A DNA stretch of 64,000 nucleotides from Botryllus schlosseri (taxonomy: Eukaryota): contig CM119382.1 of the NCBI GenBank assembly GCA_051294905.1, positions 5,580,001 to 5,644,000 of the forward strand, given 5' to 3'. The stretch's first letter is position 1; each line of letters opens with the position of its first letter. This document shows positions 376 through 61,100 of this stretch, piece by piece. The notes under the pieces were generated by a model. That model did no database searches and was not told the DNA's origin. It saw nothing but the letters and a program-made list of their open reading frames with translations. The position numbers were made by a program, and so were the translations under genes.

Positions 376-3300
376 CTTGTTACAGGCGCGCTTTTTTCAT
401 CGAAGTAAAACGATGACCTGAAACATAGTTATTTAGTGAAAGAGGAGCGCCAGAATTGAGAATAACAACGTAAGAAAATATTTGTGGTTCAGTTTCATTC
501 ATATCAAACGCATACTCTACCCTGACAAAGAAAGAATTTTGGCACAAAGGCACCAGAAGCACACAGCAAACATTGCCATCAGATCTATGTACAGGGAAGA
601 GCTGTACTGGCAAGCTCGAAAAAACCAAAACAAAATCCACAAGTCAACTTGTAGAGATATGCACTTTATAATTGCACCCAAAAACTTCACTGGAAAAATC
701 TTATTTGAAACGAAACCAGTGTCCTTGCATCAGCAGGTGGATGCCAAAACATAAAACATAGCATTGAATAGCAAGCGTATTCGAACCTAACGCAAACATA
801 ACGTGACTAGTTCCCAAATATACAGTACCGGTATATTCGGGAATAAATATACTAAGGAGGTGTGGCAAAGGCGAATGGTAATGAGCAGCACATACAACAG
901 GAAACCATCAGATTTTAAAATGATTTGCAAGAAAAATGAATATCAAATCATAAAACAATTTCAGTGGTTTTACTGATGTTGAAGTTAACACACTTTCAAT
1001 ATCCAATTGACTAAGACTATATTCATAATTCATATTCCTTCCCTTGGAGTGTGTGTAGTATCTAAAAATAGTACATTGAGCTCAAGTGATCTCTTCACCC
1101 AGATTATTCAAAGTTTCATGGCGGCGACGTCATATTTGGTGATACGATTGTTGGTATACAATGTTATTTCAAATTCTCTACCAGTTGCTGACTAAAATAT
1201 CCGGGGTTATTTCAATATGAATATACCAAGTTCTGTACCTCTGAGAAACCCTTTAACAAACTTTGACCGTGTTTTCAAAGCAATACTGACATAAAAACAA
1301 CCAGTCTTTCTCTCACTGATGATATATAACTGCAGCCTGGCAATGCAGACAATTAAAAATCCTAACTACAATGGTCTTGCAGTAGGTACATATGCCATTA
1401 ACAGTTGATTACTCGATGCAATTATGCTGGTTCATGTTCCAAATTAGCCATGTAACACTTTAACTGAAAATCCTAGCAAGAAATTAGCCAGTTGATGTAG
1501 TATCTTTACCTGGTCAAATTACTGTCACTATCCGAGTGTGAAGAGTCCAAGTAGAATGCTGATCCGCCTCGATCAGATCTGTAAATATAACACGATATCA
1601 AAACGGCTGTGAATTATTCTTCATTGGAGATGGTGCATTTTAGAACGATTAAACAACCTATCTCACATTTTGTAGGAAACTACAGGCCATACTTGCCTTG
1701 TGAGGTTCGTTTCACTAGCGGGGTGCATCGTCCCTGAATTTGTGTAGAAACTCGAGTTTCCTTGACCTGACCTGTGATATATGAATGCATGCACAGTGTC
1801 ATTTCCTCACAGTACCCCAAGAACCATGTAATATTCCTGTACCTCGCGAGATTTGTTTCGCTAGCAGTCAAAGGCGTTGTGTGTCTGATAAAAATTGAGA
1901 ATTGAATTGTAGTTACCCTTTATCAGTAGTGATATATGTATAAAATTTATAAGTGTTCGTAATGACAGTAGTAGTACAATATCGGTCTAATGAATCAAGA
2001 TCAATCTCCTGGAAGATATCATCATAACCCTAGAAATTATGCCATTAGAAAACTTCTCACAATGGTTATGTAATGAAATGTTTTCAGTGCTGACTTCCAT
2101 TCACAACTGCGAACTCAATATTCTGTGTTCCTACATAAAAACTACCATTTTGTGATCATTGGACAATAAATGCATATCATGAGTCAGTCATCCATGCAAA
2201 ATAGAATTCACTACATGTAAGAGTCCCTCGGACAAACCGTTATAATTTTGTATTTTGATCCTGTACAATCATACACAGCAATATCAATTGATCGAAAGAT
2301 AATAATAACAGCATAAGCGCAAACACATAAGCTCCAGACAAAATGAAAGTAGTTTATTTGTGATCAATGGATGGCAATAACCGCAAGAGCTCAAAAGCAG
2401 TGATTTGGTTCAAATGAAACAGGTCACAGAATATATTTGAAATATTAGTACAAAACAGATCACAAATAACAACAAAGGTAGACCTAGTCTCCTCAGAGTA
2501 GACTATCGAATGATGACTAAAAAGAAATGTTCACCAGCCTCCACAATCTATCTTTTTCAGTCACTGTAGACTATTTATAACACTACACAGCATAACTTAC
2601 AAACAACACTATTAAGGGTTCAGCAATAGCATGACCGTTTGGCTTATATAAAGTAGCCTATGTCACCTGTGTGTACCATGAGGAGATTTACCAGTAGGAA
2701 GTCAGAGAACCAACACACGCCCACTACAACTCTTAGTAATAACAACTCAATGAGACGAGGTGCCGTAATCAGGGTCCGTGTATCTTTTCCGCATGCCATA
2801 TGAAAAGAGTTGATGAAACAAAATACTTTGAAAGTCTTGTACTTTAGAGGTGATGTAAATATGATAAATGTAAACAATGAACTTTCATCACAACCATTTA
2901 TTTTGATGCCAATGTAACTACAGACAAAGATGACAGGGATTGAAACTAATAAACCCATTATTAGGCCTACCATTTCAAAAAGCTAAGGAATCTTCATATG
3001 TGTAGTTCGAATTTCCGTCAACCATGGTTGACTGGTCAGTTGAATATTTCTACTACATTCATCTACACGTGCCCACCATGAGCAGCTACAAATGCTAGGT
3101 GTTATACTCAGAGGAAATTTAATGCTCATGCAGTGCCATCGAAGGATTCATAAGCGTTAAAGATATTTGCAATGAAATTCAGACAATCATAATAGAGACT
3201 TGTGTTGAATTGTAAAATACAAACCACTTTACTAAACAGCTCAGACACATTATATAAAATGATTTCCCTATTCCACTTAGGGACTCGGTAATGATTGACA

Positions 3301-8742: not shown

Positions 8743-11700
8743 TCACGTAGAATTTTGCGTCCTGACCCCCAACGTCGAGTTCACAAGGAGCCTGCGATGC
8801 ATCGCGATCTCTTCCTGGGTCAGGGGCCTGGCGTCGTACGGGCAATGCTGCATTGTCGGCAGTGTGGACTGGTAGGAAGACCGTGCGAATGCTGTAGCAA
8901 AACTTGTTTTAGAATTGCGCCGGCCAAAGTGTGATGCTTTACGGAAACGAATTACCTTTAGTTCGATTTTGTGATGGCGTGGCGTCTTCATCATCACTCA
9001 AGAGCTTCAAACGAAATTCCCTTGTCAATCTCTCTTCAAGGTACTGTTGTTCTTCGTCATCCTAAAAAAGAGATATCGTCTGCGTTCAACATTACCAGTC
9101 ACGATTTCGTCTGCGCATCACGCTGACAGTAGCCTCTTCATTTTCGCAATTCCCATTGAGCGGACAACAGTGGTTCTGCTAAGCCGCAGAACACTTACAC
9201 TAATCTACAAGCATTTGCGAAACCCCAAAAACTGTAATCTGTCCCGAATCCCATCTAACCACACATGTATATATTACTAGAGATTGGTGGTGCACAAAAT
9301 GAACTGTCAATCGTTTCACCATAAATACGCTGTCCGACACTCTCAGACTGCGCGTTAACGGTGCAACACTCTACCATGTATTGACAGTATCGATCGAATT
9401 AGTTGAGCAAAAGCGGTCAATCGTGGATTGTTTGACAGAAGATATCTATGTCACAGTGAATAACACATACTTATTCGCACTAGGTATACGTTGTGGACTC
9501 TATACGGAAGTAACTAAAACATGTACATTTTTACAAGGTTATCTCGTCTTCTTGACTATGTACACACTCGGTTGCCCTGCTCTCGTCTCGCTTCGTGGCG
9601 TAGTTGGTTAGGCGTTGACATTCTGAATCCAACGGTATATTACATGTTGGTTTCGCATCCCATTGAGGTCGTGTTTTACAGTTTTGAAAAGTGAAGTAAA
9701 ATTTTTCGGAAATACCAGCCGGTTATAACCTTGAATACAAATGTAACAGTACCCCGTGCCAAAAACCAATTTCCTATTCCTACGCACTACACCAGGATCG
9801 AATGCCGAACCTTTTTTTCATCCTCTGAATCCGAAGAGCTTTCTTTTTCGTTATCGATATCGGGTACGACTTGCACTTCATTCGGAGAGTACCGATGCAG
9901 CGACCTCGCGGACACACATCGTCTCAGAGCTTGCAGGGTTTCTCCGGACGTCAGACGGGCTGCCGGGTCGAAGGTCAAAAGACCACGGATGATGTCGTTG
10001 ACTTGCGTCGACGTGGTGGAGTTGCTGAAACAGGAGTAGAAAGGGTGATATGTTTGTGAAGTCTTGCGGCCGAATCATGGTTCGAGGGCACCTTTGTAAG
10101 CAAAACTACCTTCTTTTCACACTTGAATGTTTTAACTCGAATGTTTTAAAACGCTTGGCCCGTAGTAAAAACATTGGAGCCTAGGAAACTTAGGCCGCTC
10201 CGTGACTCGTGGCTCGTGATAATGCTACCAATGTTCAATGCAATGATGAGAAATTATAGTCATGGCCTGGACAATTCGCAATTGTCGCTCTTGCACCGCA
10301 AAAGATTTAGGAATGTTTTTTTGATTGCCAGCCCGAGTCTGTGCCGGGCCAATGTTATTCCAGATTGTATCACACAAGCTCCAGGGTTAATTTCCCCACA
10401 ATGAAAATACTACACCATCTTAGCTGACAGTAGATATCATATTGAAATTAATCCAGATCATATGCAAAGACAGGCTGGACCATTGATACACAAGGCAACT
10501 AGGCCACAATTCATTGCGCATCTTTACTATTCATATTTGAGCGCAGAATGGAAAGATCTCCCCGCTGTGCTGTAATATGATCTCCACGTTCTCTCTGAAT
10601 AAGGAACCTCGCTTTGGTAACTAAGGCCAAGATACATCTCTGTCTCTGTTTCTGCTGTTATCATAGTTAAATTGTACTATTACAACTAGGTTTTATACAG
10701 GCAAATGATGAAGTCACCAGCACCATGAGGATTATCTGACAGTTGTAATATCTGCATGACTGCATTTGTGCATACATTTAACCTGATGTGTGATGAATCG
10801 TTAGATCTTCGAACTTGAAACATCATTTTCTGAAGCATTCTCCTATTTTTTAATAAATATACCACTTTTCTTTTTAAATATCCCTTGTTTTTTTCCGGCT
10901 GGCTACACCCCTGTTATATTCATATTGAAATGAACCCGAATATTTCCGGCTGACACTCGTCATTTATCAAAATACGTCAACCAAATATGTGTCTACTGAA
11001 GGATCTCGTGTACCGCGTAAAAATAGTATATTGGAGTTCAAGCGCTCTCTCCGTCCCGACTATTCGAAATTTCATGCAGGTTACGTCATATTTTGCGACA
11101 GGATTATTGATATGCAATGTTCTCTCCCATTCTCTACTAGCTGCTGACGATTACCCCTGACGAGTGTCAGCCGAAAATATTCGGGTTCATTTCAATATGA
11201 ATATCCGACTCAATTGTATATTGCTGTTCTGTACCTCCAAGAAGCAGTTGTAATTGAGAAGAAACATATAGTGTTTCTTCAACTTAAACTGCGACTAGCA
11301 ACACCCATGACTTTGGCCACCTCCCCTTTTTGATTACTAAATACATTCGTATCCCGTCAACAAAGAGTGTGTCATTCTCACCTTGGAATGACAAAGTCTG
11401 CTTTACGAATCTTTTTGAAGAGTTGCATCGGATCCTTGTCGTAAAACGGAAACTGACCGTACAGCATCATAAAAAGCACGACACCGAGTGACCACATGTC
11501 GCTGGGCTTTCCAGCATAAGGTTTTCCTGTCAATAGAATTGAAGATATAGTTTGAGTATAAACATACTGCAGCAAAATCATATGAGCTCGATACCACAAA
11601 AATGTCGAAGCAAAGCATCAGTGATCACATAAGATTATATCAGCAACCAGACACTAAAACCAGATTTGTATGACAGTCCATGGACATATGAGCATGCAAC

Positions 11701-14700: not shown

Positions 14701-17700
14701 GTTCAACGGTGTCCCGCCGCATGTCGCGGCTCTCTTTCTCGTCTCTCGAAGCTGTTCCAGAAAGGAGGCGGCGTCTGAAATCCAACAGAAATAGCGTCAG
14801 AGTTGGGACAAATACCGGAACGATTATTTTCAATATTGGCAAATCGAATCCGGCATTGGCAGAAGTAACAAAAGAAATTTGTACTCGTACAGTCAGAGAA
14901 TAATTAAATCATAAGAGACTAAGGTATTCATGTCGAAATAACCCAAATATATACGGCTGACATTCGTCAGGGGTAATCGTCAGCAACTCATAGAGAATTC
15001 GAAAGAACGTTTTATAAATCTACACCAACAATCGTAGGCCTACCACAAAATATGACGTCACTAATCAAATTTGGCGACACGATTGTTGATATACCGAGTT
15101 TTTTTTATTGCTCCACTACTTGCTGACAATTACCCCGGACGAGAATATTTGAGTTTATTTCCATATGAATACATCATTCAATTGTATAATGAAGCTCTGT
15201 ACCTCAAAGAGCCTCTTGAACTATAAGACATAAGTCCCTGCCTTTCGAGTAGGCTAAAAGTACTTCAAATGCAAAGTAGAAGTGAGAATGCGAGTCTTGA
15301 CGTCGGTGTTTTGAAGCAGTTTGAGACAAGGCGCTAATATAATAACGAAGAAAATGGTTCTGATTCCGTGAAATCTACATTGGCGCGACGTAAGATACTT
15401 CCGGATATCGACTATCACCTGGGTATAGATTTTCTTGCATTCTATGTCAGTTTATATGCTCCTCTTGGTCACCGATTTCATTGTGAAAAGTATTATATTA
15501 TTTGTGAATTACATCGCTATCGTTTTAACGAGGCTATTTATAGATGACTGACCTACGGATAGATAGTAGATACGCAACACCCGCCGTCACGCTTGCTTGC
15601 CCAGAGGAAATGACTGCTCAGCAATCTGAACGCAACATATTTGCCAATACCATAGCTGACGACACGAGCGGCGAGCGTTCAAATTCAATAAAGTTGATCT
15701 TATTTGTAAGCTACTGTCGCACTGATTACGAAAATATACATTAAAATCTGATCAGGGCAATGGAACTTCCTCGAAATACACCTGAAAGTCTGAAAATCGG
15801 CATCGTTCTGAACAATCGCAACCACGCAAGGGCCATTGTTATGGTCATTGTGCTGCGTCGCTACGATTGTTGAGAACAATGCCGATTTTCAGACTTTGAA
15901 GGCTATTTCGGGGTGGTTCCATTGCCTAATGAAATTTTAATGTATATTTTCAGAATCAGCGCGACGATAGCTTTCAAATAAGATCAACTTTATTTAATTT
16001 GAGCGCTCGTGTCGTCAGCTATTGTGTTGGCAAATATGTTGTGTTCAGATTGTTGAGCAGTCATTTCCTCTGGGCAAGCAAGCGTGACGACGGGTGTTGC
16101 GTATCTATCCGTAGGTTAGTTATCTATAGGCTATTTCAACGAAGTTTACTAATTTCCGGCCCATCCGCGTCACATTTTTTCCTCAATAATTAGCAATTTC
16201 TTTCTCCAAACTCAATCACACATGAACATGAACAAGAACAGTGAACTGGCTGAAAAAAAACATAATCTCCATTCAAGCATGCCCGGAACATTATGTTTCG
16301 TAATGGCAAAGCAACGAAATTCACCGTCGTAAATGCTATCATTTTAAAAAATGGTCAAGATTCAAATTCTAATTTTCACGGTTTCCACTGGCCGGAATTG
16401 AGCCAAATTTTGAATGCCACGGTTTTTCATTCAACCTAACAATTCACTGACGTATGCAACATGCAAGTGAAATTTCCGAAAGAGTTTTCTTTTTACCGTA
16501 CAATAGGGCTGTTCCAAACTAACTTTTACTAAAAAACCCCACTCAATTCTGACCGTACAATATGAAATTGAAATTACGGTGGGAAATTTCCAATTTCAGA
16601 TTGTACGGCTTCTTATGGTCGAAATTCAGTCAAATTTGGTGCGCTGTGTTTTTACTTACGTAACCTAACAATTTAATCACTATTGTAGCGAAATTTTGAA
16701 AAAACTTTTTTTTTGACATACAATCATGCATCGGAAAGATAAGATCACCAACCGGTAGCGCTGTGAGGGGCGTTGACCGGTGGCGAAGCCTCGAATACGT
16801 CGTCGTCATCATCGTCGACAGAAGAGGAATTTTCCGTGCTTTCTTCCGAAATATGCTGAACCTCCAACGATGTCGGCGTCGAATTCCTGCGGAGCATTGC
16901 AAAATTCCTTGCGACCGGCGCGATCGATGAAAACGGGCCACCGACGCTGTATCGCTCTCTCCTAGATGGAAGATAACAGATAAGCAATTCGTTATTTGCG
17001 TCGCAGCGTCTAGAAACAATTTTGTGACAAAATTGCTGACCACCCACGCAAACCGTATGTCCACATCGCGTCCATCAACTCCTTAACATAGTTCTACCTT
17101 TCCACAGCGCTCCCCACCTCCACTGGTTACTTGTTACATCGGTGATTTTGTAAAGTAAAAGATAGTTTCAGGATGGGCTTGAAGCACTTTTTACGAGTGA
17201 AATTGTCATGAAAACTTGGCGGTGGGGCCCCTGAATCCCCGCAAATTATTGTACTTGCACCAAATTGTAGCAGGGTTGTAGCCTAATCACAAGGTTCCGA
17301 GTCACAAGTCAATCTCACTCTTATAGTTTTGACTCGAGTCAAGTCGAGTCATTTTCAATTCACCGCCGAGTCAAGCCGGGATCCAACTCAGTGAGTAGAG
17401 GGTTGAGTCCGAGCCATAGTGCTGTGACTTGAGTCCGAGTTCAAGTCATTGTGTTCACTGTTCAGTTTTGAGTTCAGGTTCAACCCACTTTTATCAACTC
17501 TGCTCGAGTGATATAGAATGGTTTACATTCATAATATCGTAATTTTCCTCATTTCCAACAGTTTCTGGCCCTATTTTCCAAGCATCAGGGCTGATAGACG
17601 AAATACTAATAATGCGGTGACTTTACTATTCTTCGAAGTTACAATGAAATATCTGTCTCGGCCATCCTGGTCTCGAGTCATATGACTTGGTTACGCATTT

Positions 17701-20700
17701 GAAAAAATGACTCGAGAGTCAAGAAGAGTCACCAAAAATCGCGACTCGAGTTGAGTCATGACTCGAGTCATTTCAACGCTGATTTGTAGTCTCGTTGGTC
17801 ATTTTGTGTTAGTCGCAAAGATGCACTAAAATTTTGATAGTGTCCACTCCCAATTAACTGGTTAAGGTATACGACCGAAGTAGTTTTGGCTTGCCTTTGC
17901 TACTTCTACTTGTAATTGAGTTGAAATTTACCAACTTCTTCTGCTTTAGTAACAGCAAAGCTGACTAGTTTCAGTATCTCTAGTTGTCTTTCTGATACGA
18001 TTCAGAGATCAGCATGGATTCGGACCAGAATTATGATTTCAAAGCTGGAATTCGACAATAATTTATATCTATTCTCAAATTTTATGCAAATCTCAGTAAT
18101 TCACAAATTCGAACTTCGGCAAGATATCGTCGCTAGAAAACCAAACCGTCTTATGTCCACTTTTGGTATTTTTGAATGTTCTTCTTCTATCACTATTTGG
18201 ACATGGCCATAGATCTATCTTTTTAACTGGGTTCCATGTTCTTTAAGTAGCATGAATTTCTAGTGAAATGGACATATGGAACTCGAATTTTCAAGGTAAA
18301 TTGAAAACCAAACTGGTTTGTGTCCAAATTATATATTAAAATTGCCCAAAATAGATAGAAAACTGTTTGGTTTTCCAGTGACGATATGGCGCCGTGATAA
18401 ATAACTTTTACTGTAGCTAACGGAATGTCCACATAATTACTGCTGACATTGCTGACAACAGTTTCTCGGCTCACCAGTAGCCTATATCGATAGAAAATTT
18501 CTCACAGCGACTTCTTAAGGGGTTAAATTATTTACGGCTAAAGAATCCTCGGGCAGAATCATAGCTACAAAACCGACAAGATAGCGTGGTGGTGGAGTGC
18601 CCGGCTTCTTGGTCGGTAGGTCGTGTGTTCAATCCCCGGCCGGGTCAGACCATAGACATGATATGATTAGTAACGCCGGTACCATGACTTCACCACTTGG
18701 AGCTCAGCATTACCGGATAGCATGGAGGGGTTGTGCAAGACATAGAAAGTCTTACAAGGATATATCTGCAGATCTGCACCTTCCTTGTCATGTGCACATC
18801 GTGCACTCATGGTATGCTTGTGTGAATTTATATCATGAGGCGCAAAAAATATCAAGAACACAAATACATAACAACCTTTCCTTTTCGAATAGGCCTATAG
18901 GCAGTTGCCTGCTATTGAGAAGACGATCGAAGCAAACATTTCTATCTCTCTGACAAAATACAGATCCGCAAATGGCGTAAAACAACATCTCATACTGGAT
19001 TTCCAGTTATAGGATACATAACAATGTTTCTTAACCAGGGTTCACACGAATCCCAGAAGTTCGCTGGAAGTCAAGACACACAACCTACTCTTAGAGCAGA
19101 GCTCACATCAATTGGTGTGTAGTAAATATTCATTATCATCTTTTTGTTTTGTGTGAAAATCATATTTAAATGGTTTTCTTAGTTTAACACCGTTGTTGAT
19201 GCACAGTTCAATACATTCTATAGCAATGTGTTAAATGTGTGATGTGATAGATTTCTGTTTTACGATTAGCCAGAAATTTGGAATTAGCCACGTTACTAAA
19301 CGTTAAGTACCCCTAGGATACGTACCTGGCCGCGGTGTGATTCGCAATCATCTGATGATACATATTATTCCTGGCCACCCCGTCAGAGTCTGTAACAGTT
19401 GGGTAAGGTGGCGGCGGTCGTTCGTAATGCGGGGGCGCATTGCCAACACCGGGTGGTCTATGACTCGTGCTGGAAGCGCCCTCCTGAGGTAGTGAGGTGT
19501 TTGTAGAATTTCGGCGGAATGAAGCGGATTCGTTCACTAAATTTGATTGAAACTTTCGAACGTAGTACGGATAATGAGCATTGCTCGCGATAGGGTAATG
19601 AAGTCCGAGAGCCCCGCTTTGGTGCATCTGAAAACAGATCACAAAGTTGCTCCATGTTCAATTGTTCATATATAGCTGTACCTAAACGATAGGGTTGTTC
19701 AAAAATAACTTTTTGTATAATAATTTGGCTCGATTCCAACTGGTAGATGTGAACGCACAGGAGTTTGAAAATTTTGAATCCATTATATAAATTTTTTTTT
19801 TTAATTTAAAATGTTACAGTCAACCCCTTGAAATTGTTCAGTTGTCTACAAAAACGATTTGAGTTTTCCATTCATAATTCTGGGATTAGCCTACCTACCG
19901 TCCAGGCTATTTTTGCGAATCCAAAACTTTCAACTGCAATAACTTCGCTTCTACCGGTTGGAAGTGAGCAAAAATTGGTAAGCACCGTTCTTTCACACAA
20001 CTTGACGGTTGACAGTAAAATTTGATGAAAAAATTTTTCAATTTTTTAAAATAAATTCAAAATTTTCAGACTCCTGTGCGTTCACACCTATCAGTTGGGA
20101 TTGAGCCATATTTAGTGCGCAGTGTGTTTTTACGCAACCTAACAATTCAGTCAGTGAATCCACGGAATCCAGAAAGAAGTTATTTTCGAACAACCCTACT
20201 GTATAAAGAAAGAGCTACCAAGCTAGAAAAGGAGATCTGCATGCTGGATGTTGTAATACCGAGACTCAAGACACCTCAAAACCACTGATAAATAGTTTTG
20301 AATTGTCAAACATAGACAATGGACATGCTGCTTCAGGTTGCGAAATGACCAGGGTAGTTGTTTGAAGAACTGCCAACGATCCACTAATCCAAAACTCATT
20401 CATGTTCGATTTGAAGTGGTTCGTCTTCTAAAGAAATCAATGAAGACTGACTTCCTGAGCAACCAAGTAGGTTACGCAAATACATGTGCTAGTTGCCTGG
20501 ACTGAACATACCGTACGTGTTTTCTTTACGTGAAGTGGCCATAAAAATGCAATCTGCAATTGATGGATTCGATGCGATAATAATCAAATTAATTACTTTT
20601 TGTAACCTTTGTTCACCAGAAATTAAACTGTGGAACCCTAAATAGTTCAGAAGACACTCATGCAGGTACAGAACTTCAGTTAAAAATTGAATAATATAAT

Positions 20701-21331
20701 TATAACGAAATAAACAAAAATTTTGACTAAGCAACTAGCAAAGAACTGAGAAGAATATTGTGCATCAACTTCAACACTCATATCACCATTACCCCTTAAA
20801 ATATTCCGGGATAAATTCAATATGAATATATCATGAAATAGTGCAAGGCTGTTATCAAGTTAGACCTTTCCGAGGGGCAGAGATACACGAATACTCTCGG
20901 CATAATAAAGATCATACCTCTAAAACGGATGAATGGGAAGCGGCCCTGCTTCTGCTGTTGCAATTATTGTTATCATTGGAGCTCAGGAGGAGAACGGGGT
21001 TTATCTGATTTAAACCGGTCAAGGCGGGTCGGTATCCGCTTTGGAGCTGCAAGCCGGGATGCATCCGCGGGATCAAGTACGGTCTCTGCATTGACGAATA
21101 CAACACCGGGTCGAAAAGCAGTCCTTGAATATTGCGGCCATACGGCGGGAACAAAGAAGTGTTCGGAAACTTTGTAGCATTGTGGGGTGAGTTCACGGAC
21201 TGCGCCGTACAATGGAATGCCGCCGGTAGTTGCGGTCTAGCCTGTGCTCGATTCTCTGAAGTCTGGGCTCCGTCGATATCGTTTCTCGAAGAACCATCCG
21301 CAAAACTTCCTCTCATCGTTCGGTTATCCAT
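8743..21331 (-). CDS. STK40: Serine/threonine kinase 40 (Tribbles-related pseudokinase) with long N-terminal extension
   Basis: Exons 21331-20918, 19627-19326, 16961-16753, 14774-14493, 13621-12832, 12651-12500, 11526-11382, 10024-9811, 9061-8956 and 8891-8743 join in frame with GT-AG boundaries (2763 nt, 920 aa). STK40 hallmarks: KRRMGPFIFGPKLDSSPV, HRDLKLENM, TNFCLGRHL, RGSPAYISPDVLSGKPY, QVVPDID, YDARPLT. The kinase exons are high confidence; joining the first four exons is less certain. Confidence 0.85.
10916..11250. mobile_element. PLE remnant with inverted terminal repeat
   Basis: Minus-strand partial repeat 10916-10962 abuts a plus-strand copy that begins with a degenerate end of the GIY-YIG ORF (FIKIRQPNMC..VYRVKIV vs FIKIHQPKLC..VYHLKIV) and continues through the 3' repeat. 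Confidence 0.8.
11143..11186 (+). ncRNA. Putative minimal type I hammerhead ribozyme in a PLE terminal repeat
   Basis: accc-CTGACGA-gtgtcagcc-GAAA-atat-TC-gggt: complete core, 4-bp stem I, and a 1-bp stem III with a palindromic tetraloop. Upstream GCTGAC is complementary to GTCAGC in loop II. Confidence 0.65.
11692..11856. repeat. 15-bp minisatellite (CATGCAACACTTGGC / CATGCAACACTTCAG), ~11 units
   Basis: Direct reading; lies in an STK40 intron. Confidence 0.95.
11893..12329. mobile_element. hAT-type GACTCGAGTC MITE
   Basis: Same family; flanks agactagg / gaactagg (6/8). Confidence 0.8.
13697..14184. mobile_element. hAT-type GACTCGAGTC MITE with duplicated left end
   Basis: Two CAGGG(C/T)TGTAATGACTCGA starts (~13697, ~13833) and an end at CACAACCCTG. 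Confidence 0.75.
14925..15235. mobile_element. PLE remnant, inverted pair of terminal repeats
   Basis: Minus copy ~14925-15062 and plus copy ~15055-15235, both homologous to 51894-52060. Confidence 0.7.
15540..16127. mobile_element. 588-bp fully palindromic non-autonomous DNA element with 9-bp TSD (Mutator/foldback-like)
   Basis: Arms pair almost to the centre; perfect AGGCTATTT duplication (15531-15539, 16128-16136). Confidence 0.88.
17271..17781. mobile_element. hAT-type GACTCGAGTC MITE
   Basis: Same family; flanks aattgtag / atttgtag (7/8). Confidence 0.85.
18573..18740 (+). mobile_element. tRNA-derived SINE, diverged copy
   Basis: gatagcgtggtggt..ggtaggtcgtgtgttcaatccccggccgggtcagaccatagac..gctcagcattaccggatagcatggagg. 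Confidence 0.7.
19690..20198. mobile_element. TAGGG-terminus MITE family copy
   Basis: TAGGGTTGTTCAAAAATAAC...TTTTCGAACAACCCTA; internal homology to 34073-34716. Confidence 0.75.
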
Positions 21332-22399: not shown

Positions 22400-22966
22400 T
22401 TATTTCGCAGGTATCATGCTCTGAAGCTGTTCCGACAACCATGATATCCCATCCTGAAGTCCTTCACCAGTTTTAGCGTTACTCGCGCAGATATGCCACG
22501 CTTTGTTTTTGATGTTATCCAAGCCTAGCAGCTGCGAGCACTTTACAGCTGACAAGGAGTCGGGCAGGTCCATTTTATTGGCGTAAAACAAAATAGGAAT
22601 CTTTCTACCGCTAATGTCCGAATGGTTCAAAAGCTGCGAGAGTTCGTCTTTAGCTACGGCGATGCGTAATTTATCGGCGCTGTCGACGACGAAAATGATA
22701 GCGTGCGCTTCCTTGTAATAATGTTCCCACAAGGTACGGTACCGTCCTTGCCCAGACATGTCAAACACTGTAAACGCGAGGCTCTGCGATTGAAATTTTT
22801 CTACGCTAAAGCCAACAGTCGGGACGATATCCTGTTTTTGAGAATCTTTCGGCCGCAAAAAGTTTATAACAGTGCTTTTTCCGCTGTTATCTAGTCCCAC
22901 ACATAGGATGCCTGCTTCCTTCTTCTTGTTGCCAAATAGTTTCCTCAACGAGTCGAAAAGTCCCAT
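22400..22966 (-). CDS. ARL6: ADP-ribosylation factor-like protein 6 (BBS3), intronless CDS
   Basis: 188-aa ORF with MGLFDSL N-terminus, GLDNSGKS P-loop, [27 protein letters not shown] and CASNA. Confidence 0.95.
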
Positions 22967-27266: not shown

Positions 27267-27780
27267 CAGGGTGTTGTAATGACTCGAGTAATTTTCTCAA
27301 AATTCGGGAATGACTCGACTCAAGTCAATCTGTGTATTGACTCGACTTGGACTTGAGTCGTTGCGCATGACTCGAACCAAGAAATATGACTCGAGACTCA
27401 GACGGCCAAGACCGACATTTCATTGTTATTTCGAAAAACAGTAAAGTAACGGGCCTATTGGGATTTCGTATATCGGTACTTGTACTTGAAAATGCAACCA
27501 GAAACTGTGAGGAAAATGGACATATTAATAATGCGAACCATTCGATATCGACAATCAGAGTTATATAAATGGGTTCAACAGGACTTTAACTGGAAACTGA
27601 GCAGTCAACACAATGACTTCGAGTCATAATACCATGACTCAGACTCGAACCTCTGTTCGATGACTTGGACTCGGACTTGACTCAGTGGTGAATTGAAAAT
27701 GACTCGACTTGACTCGAGTCAAAGACATACAAGTGAGATTGACTTGTTACTCGGAGCTTTGTGACTTGGTTACAACCCTG
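27267..27780. mobile_element. hAT-type GACTCGAGTC MITE
   Basis: Same family; perfect 8-bp TSD TTAGGAAT (27259-27266, 27781-27788). Confidence 0.9.
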
Positions 27781-30575: not shown

Positions 30576-33500
30576 TCAGTCCCTGTGCGGCTTGATGCGC
30601 GGCCACATCCCGAGCAGGTTTCTGGCAATGTAGCCCTCGCGATCTTGCTTCCGCGCCCACCACCATTCCGATTCACTGAAAGAAACAGGAATATAAAATG
30701 ATATTAAATAATTCAACATGCACCTTCCGACACTTCCGACGGTATCGATATTGTGACATTCACAACTCAAACATACGGGATGAAAAACGCTCAACTTTGG
30801 GCGTTCTAAATTGAATATTCATGGCCGCGGCCCGTGGCGGCATCACGCCGGCCATGTTAAATTTTAAATGCGCCAATGCTAATCCAGTTGTCAGCAGCAA
30901 GGCAATACAAAAATATCGCAATTTTAAATTCACGGTATGGCACAAAATAACGCACGGGTTCCAATTTTCATCACTCGTCTCTCAGATTTAATATTTTATA
31001 TCCAAAATTCGTTTTGCATCATGATCAAATATGAGTCTAGTCCGTTTCCGGCTTTGACTGCAATTTAATTGAAAAGTAGCACAGAAAATTGTAAATGATT
31101 CCACAACAGCCTTGAACATTTCGATTTCCGAAAATTGTCGCCGAGATTGCGTTTTACGCAGTGCATGTTTCATTGTTTACGAGATATCAGGTACTCGCTG
31201 ATCGACAGCACTGCCACACTCGCCGGCAAACTTGTCACACGCGCAAGTTCGTCAACACGAGAACCTTGTATAATCGTCATTTCCGCATGCGCTAACCCCT
31301 AACCCCTTCTATCTTTTTCAAACCCCTATTTTTGTTTTGGCTGGCTACGTGCCTGATCATGGGTAATATTGAAAGCCTCGGATTCATAATATACTTATTT
31401 GTCTCACTCTATACTTGTTTATTTGAACAGATAAAAGACAGTTTCTGGGCCTATTTTTCAACTATCAGTCCTGATATAAGAGACTAAGTCATACAGAATG
31501 TGTCGAGTCATGCGCAATTACTCGAGTCAATATACAAATTGACTTGAGACGAGTCGAGTCGCGATTAGAGTCATTACAACCCAGGTTAGTGATCTATAGT
31601 TTGACGAACTCACGCCTGTAATTTACAAAACAGCATATGACTGAGTAACAGCATAAAAAATTATGATCACAACTCCGAAAACGTCACCAAGCTCAATTCC
31701 GCAGTTACAATACTTACTTTTCGTCGCCTCTACGGAGGATGGTCATGATGTCGCCGTCTCGGAACGACAGCTCATCGTCTTCAGCGGCGTCGTAGTCAAA
31801 CAACGCAAAAACTTGGCCTTTATTCACCATGCCAAACTTTTCCTGCACAAAATGCGTAAAATATTAAACAAGACTGTCATTTCTGCCATGTTCCATCGCC
31901 AAACGCTGGCGGCCGAGATCAACAGCACAGGCGAAAAAGCAGCCCAAAATGACAGACTGAACTGACGGCTTGACAAGTACGCAACAGGAATGCCCGATAT
32001 CTGATCAACACACCAAGGCGTCATGTCATATTCATAGGATTGTTGCAGTATCACGTGGGAGAGACTTGTACGGGCTGCTGGATTTTCAAAATGCGCAACT
32101 AGGACTAGAACTTGAACTACTCCCAACTAGAACTAGAACTGACGAACTAAAGCACAACTAACTAAGATAGTAAATGATAACATAAATTACAAAATCGCAA
32201 GATATTCAGTAGTTAATCGACCATCAACTACCTAGATTGGTAGTTTGGACTTTTTAGACTAATGCTACTTTAATACTACGCAAAACCAGCAGAAAATATG
32301 AAATATCAAGTCTGTTAGAGAATGTTATCGGGACTGTGAATTGCGAATGACGCTCTGCCTAAGATTGTGGTTACGAATTACGAAACCGTGAGATCGGAAA
32401 AGTGAGACTAACACACCATGGCCTTGAGCAATGCTTGTAGACCAAAATTAGGTTTAAAGAGCCATTCTTCGCTGGAATTAATTTCCCCGTGCTGTTATTT
32501 CATGTGCCTAGTTTATGTATAATGTGCTCATTATTATACAGGAGAGAGCGTTTGAGGATAGCAACAAATGCAGAGACTTGGCGCGCTTCGTTCCTTAAAA
32601 TTCAGATTTCTATTTGAACTTCCAATCAAAAATACATGAGGCGGCACTGAAAAACCGAGTTGCCAACATCATTGCTATCAAGCCGAACTCAATTTACAAA
32701 TCAAACTTCCGCAAACAATGAATCCACTGTGCAAACAACGGGCCGGTAGTGCCTAACAATAGACAACCGGGGAAATTAGAAAATTGTGCCTACACAAGCC
32801 TTCAGCAATGTCATTCAATTTGCTCACACTACCATTTTTAATGAGGTACTTGGAAATACCGAAAACCAAACTTCGTTGATAACGCCATCTCAAATTTTCC
32901 ATTTCATTGAAAAATGCATGTGTTTACGTCAACTAGATTAGCATCACTTTGTGGTAACATAAGTAAGTGTAACGAACACAGCCTTGGCCCTTAAGGTGTT
33001 GTCTATTATTGTCTATTTTATCTCTTTATTATCTGAAAGGCAAGGCTTGCATTCATGAAATCCACGGGCATTCAAGGAAAAACAATGCAGACTGGAGCAG
33101 CGATAAAAATTAGATATTTTCAACCCCTAAAGTTGATATCATTCGACAATGAAGTTCCTACACGAAAGTTGAAGTTGAATCATATCATATTCATAATGAA
33201 TAAACACATAGTCGTGATACAATTGTTGATATACGATGTTCTTTCCAATTCTCTATTTGTTGCTGACAGACGAGTGTCAGCCGAAAATATTCGTGTTTAT
33301 TTCGATATGAATATATTATTCAATTGTATATTGAAGTTCTGCACCTACAAGAAGCTCCCAGAAGAGACTTAAGAATAATCGAAGCCCTACGGCTTAACCC
33401 GCACCTGAATTCCCACCAAGTAGTCGAAACACTGCTGATAACCGTCGTCCAGCTCCTCGCATTTGTCAGCTGCGGTCTCACCATCGCTAATCGTCGTGGC

Positions 33501-46019: not shown

Positions 46020-47192
<1,173 letters not shown>

Positions 47193-50970: not shown

Positions 50971-52362
50971 CAACAAAAGTTGCCCCACTAAAGACACTCC
51001 CAATGAATATGATGAATAGTGGTAAAGAGTGTACAGCCGGAGGGGGGTCTGGGGGGCTTCGCCCCCCAGACGTTCGGTCTATAACCAACACCAAAGTTTT
51101 TTTTGGGGGGGGGCCTGACGAAGTGCTGTTACGGCCCTGCCTATAAGCCAAGGTGGGTGTCTGATTCCATAGACTACTCCAAGTCGTTTCAACACCTTTC
51201 TATCTTTTCATTGTATCGCAGTTTTGTGGTGTTTTGAAATTATGAAAATATTGATAAACTGATACTGTTTCAAACTGATAAATAAATGACATTGCCATTG
51301 GTTACACCGGTTCCTTTGCCCTTTCACCTTCGGTATGTCTGTTCCGTAATGTATACGTAGTTTACAGTGTGCACGCTGGTTTTGCGTTGTTGGATTGCAG
51401 ACCAGTTGAGTGGCGTTGGTTGCAATGCATAATGCAGACTTGCAGATGCGAAGTACATATGTCAGGTGGAGGAGACGGTGAGCAAACAGCAAACTCATAT
51501 AGTTGAGTGGGTTTGGTCTCTACAGCGAAAGGCATCGGTGCGCATTTCCTGCTTTTACATTTTTAATTTATCGTTTATAGTCCTTCATGCCAGATTGCCA
51601 GTCATTTATTGGAGGCTTAGGGGTATCGAAACGAAACGATGTTGGGTTACTATAACCTATTAGTTAGACTACCACCTTGGCTATGAGAATGTAAAACTTA
51701 ACTGGATCAAATTGCCCGGGTATACGTGAACGCAACAGTAAGAGAATGAATTTGTTGGTATGAAATCACATGACTTCATTGCCTATACTTATAGAACTAT
51801 TTCATTTTGTCTGAAATGGAAGGCTAGAGGAGGTTTGTGGCTAATTTGATTTATGGTTTTAGAAATTGAAATTTTGGCGCTTCTTCGTTTTACAATTAAA
51901 TAGTATATTCATATTGAAATGAACCCGGATATTTTCGGCTGACACTCGTCAGGGGTAATCGTCAGCAACTAGTAGAGAATTGGAAAGAACATTGTATATC
52001 AACAATCGTATCACAAAATATGACGTCACCAGCATGAAATTTCGAATGAGAGAGCGTTCAATGTACTATTTTTAGGTGATACACGAACTCCTTTTGTTGA
52101 CAGAGTTTTGGTTGGTGTATTTTGATAAAAGTTGATTCCAAGGCACACAAATGGAATTGTGAACGGCCTCGACCTACGATTCGAAATCGGTCATCTCGAT
52201 AATTATTCGCACAAATCGGATTATCCAACAGATGTTTGCCGATGGCAGAATTAATTGCCTTTGATCGATCAGCATCAATCTTAAGTGGATGAGTTAAGGG
52301 TGAGCTTTTCACATCGCGTGACGCCCGTGTTCTGATAAATCTGGGGACATGTTGGTTTATGC

Positions 52363-53440
52363 CAGGGGTGGGCAAACTTTTGAGCTCGCGGGCCGCATTC
52401 AACATCTGAATTCATTCGCGGGCCGCACTATATAAAATTGGGATTATAACCCAAAACGTAATATTGATATATGACGTGGAGACAATATATGTGCTTATTT
52501 AAAACAAGCCAAATATTGCTTTGATGATATCGTACACGCGTCAGAAACATACTGTGGCGAGATTTCATAGGCAGGCGGACCTCAATAACCAATTTGTCAA
52601 AACTATAGAGATAAAAGGCCGTTGGCCCTATTCTTAGAATATGATTGAAATATAAATCTGTAAGCAGGGATCTGTTCATAGATTTAGTAATTCCACTTTT
52701 GGCTCAGTTCCAGGACACACAATGCTAACAGCATCATAATCATGTTAGCTTCAAACACGCTTCTACTTTGTGTAGGTAAAATAGAGATACCCCCATTCCA
52801 CGCATACAGACAACGAATGTGCTTATAACACGCCCGAATCGGTTTTTTATAAGCACTTCACTGAAATAATTAAAAATGAAGTGGGCAATCTAAAACCTCA
52901 CTGGTGATCCAAATTATGTCAATTTCGTTGCAGCTATCCCGCTGTGATATCAAGCATTTACCTTAGATCAGTGGTTCTCAAACTTTTTAAGACACGCCCC
53001 GCCCCCTTATGATGGTCAAAGATTTCACGGCCTCTTATCGTCATATCACAAAACGCAACCAGGATGGAAGCAAACCTAACGGGTAGTTTGATGGCGTGGA
53101 AGGTTACGACTGTGGATGAGAGATTTTTAAATATGTAATTCAGACTAATTACATAGCAATAACACTGAATTGGATGAAAATCGCGCGTAGCGCGAAAAAT
53201 TTTTCAGTCGAGCTCAGCTTCGCGCCCCCAAGGGGGTTGCGTCCACCAGTTTGAAAACCACTGTCTTAGAATTATCATGGTAAAATATAATAAGAAAAGT
53301 TAATCAAGTCCCTGCATTAATTCGATTTTTAGTACGCATTTTATCAAAATTTTTAAAAAGTTTATTTAGACTCTCGCGGGCCGCACAAAACGGCGTGGCG
53401 GGCCGCATGCGGCCCGCGGGCCGTAGTTTGCCCACCCCTG
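52363..53440. mobile_element. hAT-type non-autonomous element
   Basis: TIR CAGGGGTGGGCAAAC...GTTTGCCCACCCCTG; perfect 8-bp TSD GTTTATGC (52355-52362, 53441-53448). Confidence 0.92.
52969..53262. mobile_element. Second hAT-like MITE (CAGTGGTT termini) nested in 52363-53440
   Basis: Termini CAGTGGTTCTCAAAC / GTTTGAAAACCACTG; flanks ccttagat / tcttagaa (6/8 match); homologous to the element at 25910-26394. Confidence 0.7.
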
Positions 53441-53747
53441 GTTTATGCGGTCCTGCAGACGTCTTGACGTTCTTCCCACGTAGCCACAATCACAGTGGCA
53501 CCTATATTCGTACACTACATTACTTTGTTGAAGTGCAGGAAGCACGTCTTTGCGTGTTGAAGGGAGCAGTTGTGTTGTTGTAAAAATCACATTGGTTTTG
53601 ACTGTATCGTAACATTTACCGACAGCAGAAATCAATTGTTTTTCAAAGCGAGTGGAAATGGGGCCAATCCAAGGTAGATGGATATAAACATCTTTTATTG
53701 TTCGTGCGGTGGGCTCTGTTCGTTTTTCTGCGTTTTCTTCGTTTTAC

Positions 53748-58142: not shown

Positions 58143-61100
58143 TCAGATCTGGAAAGGAAATATATTCAAATGCATTAATGAGTTCCAAGGCAAAAGTTAA
58201 GTAATTGAAATACTACACAGCCAACCATCATCAGGCCCAAACGCCAATAACGGGCAACTTTCATGTACCTGCTCTCTACGATCTATAGGGGGTTGTCAAC
58301 AAGCTCATCAGCATGACAATGACGTGCTCGTGCTGACCAATGACCATCTGCCACCGTCCTGATTTAGGATTCATAGTTCAGTGTAGGATGGATATATCTG
58401 TAACTCGGGCAACACAGCAAGCAAATTTAATTTTTTTGACATTACTGCCGCAGTGCGAAAGTCTAGTGTCGCTTATCACCTATCTGAAGGACTGGTGAGT
58501 CATGGTCTGTAATTACCATCTGTTACAAAATTGAAAAATCAATTGGGCTTGGACAATACGACCTCAGTTGTAAATACATATGAATCGATAACAGTTAATG
58601 TTTGCAGAATCGAACAAGAAGACCTATTTCTTTTCTCAGAATGGACAGCTGCGCGTAAACTTATTTGGAGCCGCTCAAACCAGAATGGAATTGAAGCGGT
58701 TCATGAGACCGAAATCATATGTTAAATATTTGTGGCAAATGAAGCTAGAACCTCTTGGCCTTGGGTACTATGAGTGACACACATGCAGTTGCTAGATAAC
58801 GTCCTAAGAAAACTTACGGCATCGACATTGATTCCAGATTTTTTCGTTTCCTTATTATACGTTTGAACGGGCTCGTCTTCCTCCTCAGACTCGGACTCTT
58901 CTTCAGAGGAGGATATTACGTAATCTCGTGTTTCCTGCTGTGGCACGGCGGCGTCGCTTATGTCGTCGAACATAATTTCGCCTTCGTCCGGATTGTTGCC
59001 CATCATATCCATGTCGTTAATTTTAGCTGCGAAAAACGATCGAGAGTGAGAAGCTCTGTCAAAAGCCGACACAGATATATCACAGTGAAGACTACGTGAA
59101 ACTATTTGAAGGTACGGAACTGTTGGAAGTACAGGACAGTATACAATTGGATAATATATTCCTATTGAAAAAAGTCCGAAACTTTTTGGCAGACATTCGT
59201 GCGGGGGTAATCGTCAGCATCTGGTGCAGAATTGGATAGAACATGGTACATCAAAAAATCGTAGAGAATTGAAAACAACATTATATATCATTGTATAGAA
59301 AAAAATAGACCAAATTATATATAGGCCTAATAATCTTTTCAATTCTATACTCTAGTTTCTGTAAATAACCTTCAACATGTATGTTCTCCAGACAAAACTG
59401 AAACTAATTAGAACTCAAAGTATGATACTGGGAATTGAAAGAGAAATACCAATATTACTTCTAAAAAGCAGAAAATTTATTTCATGTCTTTTGTCCAGTT
59501 TGACAGTGGTCTGCTAAATCAGGTGCAAAGCTAAGAAAAAGTCGGAGTCCACTTTTCCAGATTACGACCCGCCATGGGCTGCTAGATTACGACATGATAG
59601 GTAAATGCTAGATTGCAAAATGGTAGTTTCAAACCGCTATCATGGACCATATTTACTGTGATGAAATATTTCATATGGGCGACAATGCGCCGTGAACGGA
59701 GCCACGCAACCTAAATTATATTCACCGATACGTTCGTTCGTCTACTGTGAGCGAAAATTTGGGCTTTACTTCTACTTGACAAACTGAAAATTGCGAAAAG
59801 TAAGTAGATCACAAAATATTACGAAGTAGTAGGAAATATATCTACTTGAGTACGTACCCAAGTAGAAAACCACTTGAGTGCTTCAAAAAAGTAGAAGTAC
59901 TTCGTTACTGACCACCTTTGAGTAAAACTAGTACCGGTGTAGACATCAGTCGTTGCAATGGATGACTTTTCTACTCTTATTGCGCCGATTCCGATCATAA
60001 TAACGGGGATGAGTAAAATTTGTAGCAATTATTACGGCCATAACATGCCAACATGATTTTAAAGCTCAGAATTCAAGCCTATGTTCTATCGAAATTGATA
60101 TGAAGACGGGTGGAAGTAAAACTCCCTGTTCAAGTAGAAGTAGTTGTAACGCACTATGTTACTGTTACTGACGACCTCTGCGTAGAACACACCGTCATCT
60201 TTAGTGTATTGAAGGCACTCTACATCACAACTGGGAATAATTCGCTTCAGAATTAAACTTCTGGAGTATATGTTAAGGTTGGACTTGTGCCAGCTGAAAA
60301 ATCACCAACCAACCTGAGTCTGGGAGTTCGCCGTACAACTTCAAATTACGGGCTTCTTCCGCGTTATACTTCATGATAACGTCAGCTTTGGCGTCTTGGT
60401 AATCGCGCAATCCGATTAATATGATGTCTGCTTGATTTATCCAAACCTAGAAGAGTGTATGTTGACTTGTCTTACCATATACTGTAGTAACCGGCCTCAA
60501 AATGTGAACTGCGAAAAGAAAACCGACCTTTTTCCTTAGCTTTCCTCGAATGTGACATAACCTCTTGACACCGTCGAAGCACATTGCTTCTAATCGTCCA
60601 TTACCAAGCATTTTAACAACCTGTACAGAATTGTAGTTGTATTAATGAGGCTTTAGGCACATGAATAATGCTTGCGTGATGGAAAACAAATAGCAGTGCC
60701 ATCTATAACAGGGATCAGCAACCTTTTTGCTCCAAGGAATGGTTTTAAAATGACTTTATTTTTTGCTGACCAATGTTCAATGTTGGATATTCGTTGCACC
60801 TCAAACAGTATAAGGTCCGTAAAGGGCGCACAGATTAAAGAGATTAACTTGGATTTTTATCAGTGATCACCATGCAATAGTGTACAACTTCTTGCCATCC
60901 GCGGACCACCAGCAGCCGACCACTGATCTAAAGCACAAAAGCTTATAACCTGCCGCACGGATAGGGCTACTTAGATGCAGATGAGGCATGATAGCAGTTT
61001 ACAATCATCATAATTAATCTCAGTTTTTCAGGCATTATGAGAGAATATAGACAACTGCCATACTGGCGTCACAAAACTGGTTTTCTGTGATTAGAATTGG

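What the first reader, a model, noticed from the sequence alone, without database searches (positions are those of the whole stretch)
11143..11186. Intact minimal hammerhead ribozyme with a pseudoknot replacing stem II, carried by a Penelope-like family
Seen: ACCC(11153-56)-CUGACGA(11157-63)-GUGUCAGCC-GAAA(11173-76)-AUAU-UC(11181-82)-GGGU. All core nucleotides are present. Stem III is a single A-U pair capped by a palindrome (AAUAUU). Stem II has only a G-C closing pair, but its loop GUCAGC is complementary to an upstream GCUGAC (11143-48), and the same loop could alternatively sequester the core as a CUGAC-GAGU-GUCAG hairpin. The motif recurs at about 1185, 10940, 14950, 15130, 20800, 33270, 51930 and 59190 in variably mutated form; the copy on the ORF-bearing PLE has C instead of U at position 16.1. 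Established: PLEs encode minimal type I hammerheads with palindromic stem III loops that cleave as dimers. Inference: the leader/loop II helix is a structural variant that may act as a built-in on/off switch; I cannot tell whether it has been described.
Basis: partly seen in the sequence, partly recalled or inferred. Interest (0 to 1): 0.85.

Follow-up and report, generated by a model that had tools for sequence, protein, structure and literature searches.

The report
Penelope hammerhead ribozyme with pseudoknotted helix II
This is the small self-cleaving hammerhead RNA motif in the tail of a dead Penelope-like retrotransposon copy, a known pairing, but in this whole group of elements the ribozyme's second helix is built by pairing with a six-base box just upstream instead of by a hairpin.

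Summary
At 11153-11186 (+) every hammerhead core base is present, with a 4-bp stem I, a G10.1-C11.1 pair, a 1-bp stem III capped by the palindrome AAUAUU, and an upstream box (11143-48) complementary to loop II (11166-71).

The motif lies in a ~280-nt, very high-copy repeat. That repeat is the 3' end of a canonical RT + GIY-YIG Penelope-like element (PLE).

The box/loop II helix is real. Twelve representatives of related PLE lineages (ten or eleven distinct box sequences) keep a perfect 5-6 bp complement. In a 33-sequence alignment all six pairs change on both sides. The support is about as good as for stem I.

The proposed on/off switch is not supported. Core/loop II complementarity exists only in lineages with C at position 7.

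Rfam models miss the motif. RNA-seq shows no pile-up of ends at the predicted cut, so activity is untested.

Pseudoknots linking stems I and II are known, including a validated hammerhead with a 1-bp stem II (Perreault 2011). PLE hammerheads, however, are described as lacking tertiary contacts, so this is a new variant of a known kind.

This scan already noted the same pseudoknot on other DNA of this genome. This particular copy is a solitary, truncated relic.

The parts
10963..11245 (+). 5'-truncated copy (A) of the PLE 3' end: last ~25 codons of the endonuclease ORF, 3' UTR with the ribozyme, and tail
   Evidence: 82% identical to 52129-51891(-), which continues upstream into the GIY-YIG remnant. 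Same layout in L001.
10915..10962 (-). Inverted partial copy abutting the 5' end of copy A. It starts inside the ribozyme core (AUGACGA, GGAA), so it is not a ribozyme.
   Evidence: 98% identical to the reverse complement of 11158-11204. Inverted 5'-truncated copies are typical of PLE insertions (PMC8557442).
11143..11148 (+). Pseudoknot box GCUGAC: the relocated 5' strand of helix II
   Evidence: Perfect complement of 11166-71. Covaries across PLE lineages.
11149..11152 (+). Linker GAUU between box and stem I. GA follows the box in most lineages.
   Evidence: Box-to-core distance is 7-9 nt in the closest lineages.
11153..11156 (+). Stem I, 5' strand (ACCC)
   Evidence: Pairs with 11183-86. 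All 5 stem I pairs in A5 show changes on both sides; 98.7% of cells paired.
11157..11163 (+). Core C3 U4 G5 A6 C7 G8 A9
   Evidence: The 3-8 pair is C-G here, U-A or U.G in relatives.
11164..11172 (+). G10.1, bridging U, loop II strand GUCAGC (11166-71), C11.1
   Evidence: G10.1-C11.1 is invariant in 31 distinct sequences. The 9-nt spacing leaves no room for a hairpin helix II.
11173..11182 (+). G12 A13 A14 A15.1, palindrome AAUAUU (11176-81) as stem III, C17. Predicted cut between 11182 and 11183.
   Evidence: The palindrome is kept as AAGCUU, AACGUU, ACUAGU or AAGUUAACUU in relatives.
11183..11186 (+). Stem I, 3' strand (GGGU)
51883..52129 (-). Copy B of the same PLE 3' end. The ribozyme at 51920-51968 has U16.1 changed to C.
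52061..52351 (-). C-terminal piece of the PLE GIY-YIG endonuclease (97 codons up to the stop)
   Evidence: Fits the C-terminal consensus of alignment A2.
53438..53743 (-). Linker plus GIY-YIG motif piece of the same endonuclease, separated from the C-terminal piece by a ~1.08 kb insertion (52352-53437)
   Evidence: phmmer: 1499 relatives. Full-length relatives carry RVT_1 and GIY-YIG.
14925..15210 (.). Head-to-head pair of decayed copies (14925-15072 minus, 15065-15210 plus)
33214..33355 (+). Decayed copy with a deletion from the linker to the start of the core (stem I 5' strand and C3-U4 lost)
59123..59263 (-). Decayed copy
1046..1239 (+). Decayed copy lacking the ribozyme core but keeping the 3' tail box

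Best explanation
The motif is the type I minimal hammerhead that canonical (RT + C-terminal GIY-YIG) Penelope-like elements carry in their terminal repeat.

In this PLE clade helix II is not a hairpin. G10.1-C11.1 closes a 7-nt loop, and six of its bases pair with a box 7-9 nt upstream of the core. That gives an H-type pseudoknot. It most likely stacks on G10.1-C11.1 to form a ~7-bp helix II, with one strand donated by the leader of stem I. The short linker then ties the far ends of stems I and II together. It would do with Watson-Crick pairs the job of the loop-loop tertiary contact of full-length hammerheads.

Stem III is a single A-U pair. Its palindromic cap lets two copies pair, so cleavage after C17 (11182|11183) is expected in dimers or tandems.

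Shown: the sequence features, the PLE context, and the covariation of the pseudoknot, stem I and the palindrome. Inferred: coaxial geometry, need of the pseudoknot for catalysis, and dimer cleavage.

The copy at 11143-11186 is itself a solitary 5'-truncated relic and probably does nothing now.
For: - Core and helices read directly.
- PLE context: the repeat continues into a GIY-YIG remnant. Piece 1 has 1499 relatives, and full-length ones carry RVT_1 + GIY-YIG. L001 is an uninterrupted copy with an identical ribozyme.
- 35 of 55 metagenome PLE loci with enough downstream DNA have the same architecture, mostly ~460 nt after the endonuclease match.
- Box/loop pairs differ between lineages yet stay complementary: GCUGAC, UCUGAC, GACAGA, UGACGC, UCUAGC, GGCUAG, UCGCA, GCAGC, GCAAC, ACCAG, UGCGG.
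- The count of structure pairs on A5: pseudoknot 6/6 pairs changed on both sides, 90.9% of cells paired. Slid controls give 30-45%. 0 of 500 shuffles reach the observed values.
- Longest perfect complement between a loop II and its own upstream region is 5-6; for other lineages' upstream regions the mean is 3.0.
- Precedent: a hammerhead with a 1-bp stem II and a 6-bp pseudoknot is fast, and is rescued by compensatory mutation (PMC3088659).
Against: - No cleavage data. RNA reads cross the predicted site, and no excess of molecule ends was flagged.
- Rfam hammerhead models do not score it, even at E<=10.
- PLE minimal hammerheads cleave poorly in vitro even as dimers (PMC4209133).
- Covariation cannot tell a pseudoknot within the active fold from a plain long-range hairpin used for something else.
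- The covariation rests on about ten to a dozen lineages, several known from one copy, and L045 has a poor stem I.
- The largest family has U3.G8 in the core, which may be weakly active.
Confidence: 0.75

Rival explanations
1. The box/loop II helix is a plain long-range stem-loop of the PLE 3' UTR. It would serve another step, for instance recognition of the RNA 3' end by the element's reverse transcriptase, and would not be part of the catalytic fold. The hammerhead would then have essentially no helix II and be weak or inactive.
For: The helix encloses stem I's 5' strand and the core as a simple hairpin, which is the predicted minimum-energy fold in the 96-nt context. PLE hammerheads have low activity in vitro. 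No cleavage ends were seen in RNA-seq. A second conserved 3' box lies nearby.
Against: - Stem I, which crosses this helix, covaries equally well.
- G10.1-C11.1 and the one-base bridge are invariant or nearly so.
- The box sits at a fixed 7-9 nt from the core in the closest lineages.
- The same design is catalytically required in a validated hammerhead.
Confidence: 0.15
2. One reading: loop II toggles between the upstream box (on) and the core CUGAC (off), regulating self-cleavage.
For: In the window family both pairings are possible: box/loop -8.1 and core/loop -6.8 kcal/mol. The short construct folds into the core-sequestering hairpin.
Against: Core/loop complementarity is absent in five of the seven lineages computed (-1.6 kcal/mol or weaker), and none was seen by eye in the lineages added. 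It follows simply from the box resembling CUGAC together with C at position 7. Nothing covaries to maintain it.
Confidence: 0.07
3. It is a chance look-alike or a decayed relic, with no selected ribozyme structure.
For: A loose descriptor hits 12% of shuffled windows at least once. Most copies in the window are mutated. Rfam is silent.
Against: The motif holds the same position behind the endonuclease ORF in dozens of PLE loci from several data sets. The core is conserved and three helices covary. Within this genome the ribozyme is the best-kept part of the repeat: no variant reaches 10% inside 11142-11187.
Confidence: 0.03

Closest known systems
Minimal type I hammerheads of Penelope-like elements (Cervera & de la Pena 2014, PMC4209133; Lunse, Weinberg & Breaker 2017, not readable here)
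   Same: Location in the PLE terminal repeat behind the RT-GIY-YIG ORF; type I topology; short helix I (4-6 bp); G10.1-C11.1; helix III reduced to A15.1-U16.1 with a palindromic cap, implying dimers; U3-A8 core covariation in some lineages; massive dispersed 5'-truncated copies.
   Different: The described consensus has a 7-8 bp hairpin helix II with an unpaired base between positions 9 and 10.1. Reviews state that these motifs lack tertiary contacts. Here only 8-11 nt separate A9 from G12, and helix II is made with an upstream box.
[quoted passage not shown] 2011, PMC3088659)
   Same: A 4-6 bp Watson-Crick helix joins the stem I side to the stem II side. Stem II can be as short as 1 bp. The pseudoknot is needed for fast cleavage and can be restored by compensatory change. 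Such pseudoknots are reported for all three types.
   Different: In the validated case the 3' tail after stem II pairs with loop I, in a bacterial/phage-type ribozyme with a normal stem III. Here the 5' leader before stem I pairs with loop II of a eukaryotic retrotransposon ribozyme that also lacks a stable stem III.
Non-circularly permuted hammerheads (type SGC and others; PMC10085705)
   Same: The core helices are formed as pseudoknots, and a short linker joins one side of stem I to one side of stem II.
   Different: There the three conserved blocks are reordered. Here the block order is the ordinary type I order, and only the 5' strand of helix II has moved.

Membership tests
Hammerhead ribozyme | Conserved core CUGANGA ... 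GAAA with A15.1-U16.1 and H17 | tested here: met
   All present at 11157-63, 11173-76, 11181 and 11182.
Hammerhead ribozyme | Three helices around the core, supported by covariation | tested here: met
   Stem I: 5/5 pairs covary. Helix II as pseudoknot: 6/6 pairs covary, plus an invariant G10.1-C11.1. Stem III is 1 bp with a palindrome that changes while staying palindromic.
Hammerhead ribozyme | Match to curated Rfam hammerhead models | tested here: not met
   No hit at gathering score over the window. No hammerhead hit at E<=10 on 131 nt.
Hammerhead ribozyme | Site-specific self-cleavage | tested here: inconclusive
   RNA-seq reads laid on the stretch show no excess of ends at 11182|11183. 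The library is not designed to catch 5'-OH or cyclic-phosphate ends, and most copies are dead. There is no biochemical test.
PLE-associated minimal hammerhead | Sits in the terminal repeat or 3' end of an RT + GIY-YIG element | tested here: met
   L005 and L087 carry it in the terminal repeats flanking intact ORFs; L087 holds both copies.
PLE-associated minimal hammerhead | Hairpin helix II of 7-8 bp with an unpaired base after A9 | tested here: not met
   Nine nt between A9 and G12 admit only G-C plus a loop. Canonical hairpin versions do occur elsewhere on the same metagenome contigs.
PLE-associated minimal hammerhead | Palindromic positions 15.2-16.2 / loop 3 | tested here: met
   AAUAUU here; AAGCUU, AACGUU, ACUAGU and AAGUUAACUU in relatives. 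L087 instead has a 2-bp hairpin.
Pseudoknot-stabilised hammerhead (Perreault 2011) | At least 4 bp Watson-Crick pairing between the stem I side and the stem II side | tested here: met
   5-6 bp in twelve lineage representatives.
Pseudoknot-stabilised hammerhead (Perreault 2011) | The pseudoknot is required for activity | not testable with these tools
   Needs cleavage assays with disruptive and compensatory mutants.

The most novel reading that the evidence does not exclude
A whole clade of canonical Penelope-like elements uses a topologically rearranged hammerhead. The 5' strand of helix II has moved upstream of helix I, so the catalytic three-way junction exists only as a pseudoknot. This form has escaped the stem-loop descriptors and Rfam models used to survey eukaryotic genomes. 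If so, 'core-only' hits and apparent absences of hammerheads in some PLE groups may be hidden pseudoknotted ribozymes. The low activity reported for PLE hammerheads might also not apply to this clade.
Probability: 0.3. Interest if true: 0.65.

Novelty: new variant of a known kind. Interest (0 to 1): 0.5.

Why it matters
PLE hammerheads are among the most numerous ribozyme motifs in animal genomes, yet their activity and role are unsettled. They are usually described as stripped of tertiary contacts.

This work points to a PLE clade whose ribozyme keeps a Watson-Crick clamp between stems I and II while giving up the hairpin of helix II. It gives a concrete, testable construct: box/loop II compensatory mutants in tandem dimers.

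It also shows that surveys based on hairpin descriptors or Rfam models undercount such motifs. [quoted passage not shown]

For this particular locus the biological weight is small, because the copy is a truncated relic.

Tried and rejected
- Rfam at gathering and at E<=10: only spurious weak hits to mir-4003 and sR55.
- Single-sequence folding: not informative (z -0.5 to -2.2). It favours competing hairpins, including CCGAA/UUCGG, which would bury GAAA and the cut site.
- A second reading with the upstream CUGACGA (11144-50) as the core: rejected, because there is no stem I partner and no G10.1-C11.1.
- A distal closing stem beyond the box, which would make the box an internal loop of stem I: short complements in the UCUGAC lineages only, not conserved.
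- A seventh pair (G after the box with the bridging U): changes in L026 and L043 fit it, but it is sterically at odds with G10.1-C11.1 and rests on single dead copies. Left open.
- Pfam on the two endonuclease pieces: nothing.
- Protein alignment A2 was too divergent for the search for related loci; A3 worked.
- P0081 gave no DNA. L002 and L006 showed no ribozyme on the short contigs.
- Lunse 2017 and Arkhipova 2017 could not be read, so prior description there is not excluded.
- The organism stays coded.

Full report
**1. What is in the sequence**

- box GCUGAC at 11143-48 and linker GAUU;
- stem I strand ACCC at 11153-56;
- core CUGACGA at 11157-63;
- G10.1, one U, GUCAGC at 11166-71, then C11.1;
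- GAAA at 11173-76, AUAU, U16.1 at 11181 and C17 at 11182;
- GGGU at 11183-86.

By sequence criteria the core is intact. Rfam gives no hammerhead hit at the gathering score, nor at E<=10 on the 131 nt around the motif. A loose minimal-hammerhead descriptor finds this one site, against 0.125 per shuffled window. The motif alone is therefore only weakly above chance, and context decides.

**2. The repeat and the element**

The motif lies in a ~280-nt dispersed repeat.
- Copy A (10963-11245) is preceded by an inverted partial copy (10915-10962).
- Other copies lie at 51883-52129(-), 33214-33355, 59123-59263(-), 14925-15210 (a head-to-head pair), 1046-1239, and in fragments near 20660-20830.
- Only copy A has a complete core. 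The copy at 51920-51968(-) has C for U16.1.

That second copy continues upstream into the end of an ORF. On the minus strand, 52061-52351 and 53438-53743 encode the C-terminal and the GIY-YIG-motif parts of a Penelope-type endonuclease. A ~1.08 kb insertion splits the two parts.

The upstream piece has 1499 relatives in the 1.8-billion-protein library. The full-length relatives carry RVT_1 followed by GIY-YIG. There is no RT in the window. The repeat is thus the 3' end of 5'-truncated PLE insertions, and the inverted fragment is the usual PLE insertion structure (PMC8557442).

DNA contigs of a run of the same organism give 14,294 pieces on the stretch at 90% likeness or more. Depth peaks on 11136-11207, and no variant reaches 10% inside 11142-11187. 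So the family is very high-copy, and the ribozyme is its best-kept part. That last observation carries some ascertainment bias.

**3. Is the leader/loop II pairing real?**

I fetched DNA around related PLE endonuclease genes: L001-L006 and L087-L090 by exact-protein look-up, and L007-L086 by a scan of metagenome contigs with alignment A3.

*Recurrence.* A descriptor that does not use the pseudoknot finds the same layout downstream of the ORF in 35 of the 55 loci with enough downstream DNA, mostly ~460 nt after the endonuclease match.

*Different boxes, same complementarity.* The box and loop II differ between lineages but remain complementary:

| Source | Box | Loop II |
|---|---|---|
| window, L001 | GCUGAC | GUCAGC |
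| about 40 loci | UCUGAC | GUCAGA |
| L004 | GACAGA | UCUGUC |
| L064 | UGACGC | GCGUCA |
| L045 | UCUAGC | GCUAGA |
| L086 | GGCUAG | CUAGCC |
| L005 | UCGCA | UGCGA |
| L087 | GCAGC | GCUGC |
| L088 | GCAAC | GUUGC |
| L089 | ACCAG | CUGGU |
| L090 | UGCGG | CCGCA |

L005 and L087 carry intact ORFs of 841 and 682 codons, with the ribozyme in the flanking terminal repeats. L087 holds both copies.

*Pair counts.* On MAFFT alignment A5 (33 sequences, 31 distinct) all six pseudoknot pairs show changes on both sides, and 90.9% of cells are paired. The unpaired cells come from truncated or singly mutated dead copies. Stem I has 5/5 pairs changed and 98.7% of cells paired. With the partner slid by 1-3 columns, only 30-45% of cells pair. 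None of 500 shuffles reaches any observed measure.

*Self against cross.* For each lineage I took the longest perfect complement between its loop II and an upstream 16 nt. Against its own upstream region it is 5-6. Against other lineages' upstream regions it averages 3.0. Shuffles of the own upstream region reach the observed length in 0.08-6% of trials per lineage.

*Caveats.* The lineages share ancestry. Several are known from one copy. L045 has a poor stem I. L090 could also form a 3-bp hairpin.

**4. Geometry and mechanism (inferred)**

Only 8-11 nt separate A9 from G12, so no real hairpin fits there. G10.1-C11.1 is invariant. Loop II directly continues the 11.x strand.

The box, read 5' to 3', continues the helix from G10.1. 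The two together would give a quasi-continuous helix II of about 7 bp with a break in one strand. One base (U) would bridge the deep groove, as in H-type pseudoknots.

The box is joined by 0-5 nt to the outer end of a 4-8 bp stem I. This should hold stems I and II side by side. That is the role of the loop-loop contact in full-length hammerheads, and of the pseudoknots described by Perreault et al.

Stem III is one A-U pair whose cap stays palindromic while changing sequence. This fits the dimer model for PLE hammerheads (PMC4209133).

**5. The proposed switch**

The alternative hairpin between the core and loop II has a duplex energy of -6.8 kcal/mol in the window family and -5.2 in L003/L007. 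In the other five lineages computed it is -1.6 kcal/mol or weaker. The pairing is a by-product of a CUGAC-like box combined with C at position 7, not a conserved feature.

**6. Expression and cleavage**

Several RNA data sets of the same organism hold parts of the repeat. In a bulk RNA-seq run, reads lie on both orientations equally: 563 against 573 in the core bin. That fits read-through of dispersed copies.

No place where many molecules begin or end was flagged. This is weak negative evidence. The library does not enrich ribozyme ends, and most copies are dead or solitary.

**7. Comparison with what is known**

That PLEs carry minimal type I hammerheads in their terminal repeats is established (PMC4209133). 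Those are described with a 7-8 bp hairpin helix II and, in reviews, as lacking tertiary interactions.

Pseudoknots between the stem I and stem II sides are also established. About 40% of hammerheads were predicted to use one. [quoted passage not shown]

The present motif combines the two. In the literature I could read, this combination is not described for PLE ribozymes. I could not read Lunse et al. 2017, which may show it.

Earlier follow-ups of this scan reached the same reading on other pieces of this genome. My comparative test is independent of them.

**8. Verdict**

The pseudoknot reading is supported by covariation. The switch idea is not supported. Catalytic activity is untested.

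This is a new variant of a known kind, of moderate interest. The individual copy at this locus is a relic.

Noticed in passing
window 1228-1239, 15192-15203, 20665-20676(-), 33334-33345; L003, L007, L011 and 24 more loci: The 12-mer AAGTTCTGTACC lies some 20-75 nt downstream of the ribozyme. It occurs both in the window's family and in metagenome PLE families whose endonucleases are only ~60% identical. It looks like a conserved 3'-terminal box of this PLE clade, of unknown role. In the window: 5 matches with up to one mismatch, against 0.29 expected.
   Followed up: partly
A5 columns 18/23; L011, L017 and about 40 metagenome loci: The largest related family has U at core position 3 with G at position 8 (a U.G wobble). 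L003 and L007 have U3-A8, and the window has C3-G8. Whether the U.G form cleaves is unknown.
   Followed up: no
window 52352-53437: A ~1.08 kb insertion splits the PLE endonuclease remnant. The codons for I-N-Q appear on both sides of it, possibly a target-site duplication. The inserted element was not identified.
   Followed up: no
window 53900-54650: A block of imperfect direct and inverted short repeats lies between the PLE remnant and the glycerophosphodiester phosphodiesterase gene (55303-57150).
   Followed up: no
window 17268-17759, 27280-27783, 39761-40194, 50143-50667: A second dispersed repeat family of ~450-520 nt (74-83% identical), unrelated to the ribozyme repeat. Not characterised.
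   Followed up: no
L016:3867(-), L015:871(-), L035:1959(-), L047:2029(-), L054:5376(+): Canonical minimal hammerheads with a hairpin helix II of 5-7 bp and an unpaired U after A9 occur on the same metagenome contigs. The pseudoknotted and hairpin types therefore coexist in one data set.
   Followed up: partly
L090:1502-1530: Here loop II can either pair with the upstream box (5 bp) or close as a 3-bp hairpin (GUG-CCG-CAC). This may be an intermediate between hairpin and pseudoknot forms.
   Followed up: no
window 22400-22966(-), 46020-47135(-), 55303-57150(+), 62484-63977(-): Long uninterrupted ORFs for an Arf-family GTPase, a protein kinase, a CBM20-GDPD protein and an NSUN2-like RNA methyltransferase. 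These host genes show long exons for an animal genome.
   Followed up: no
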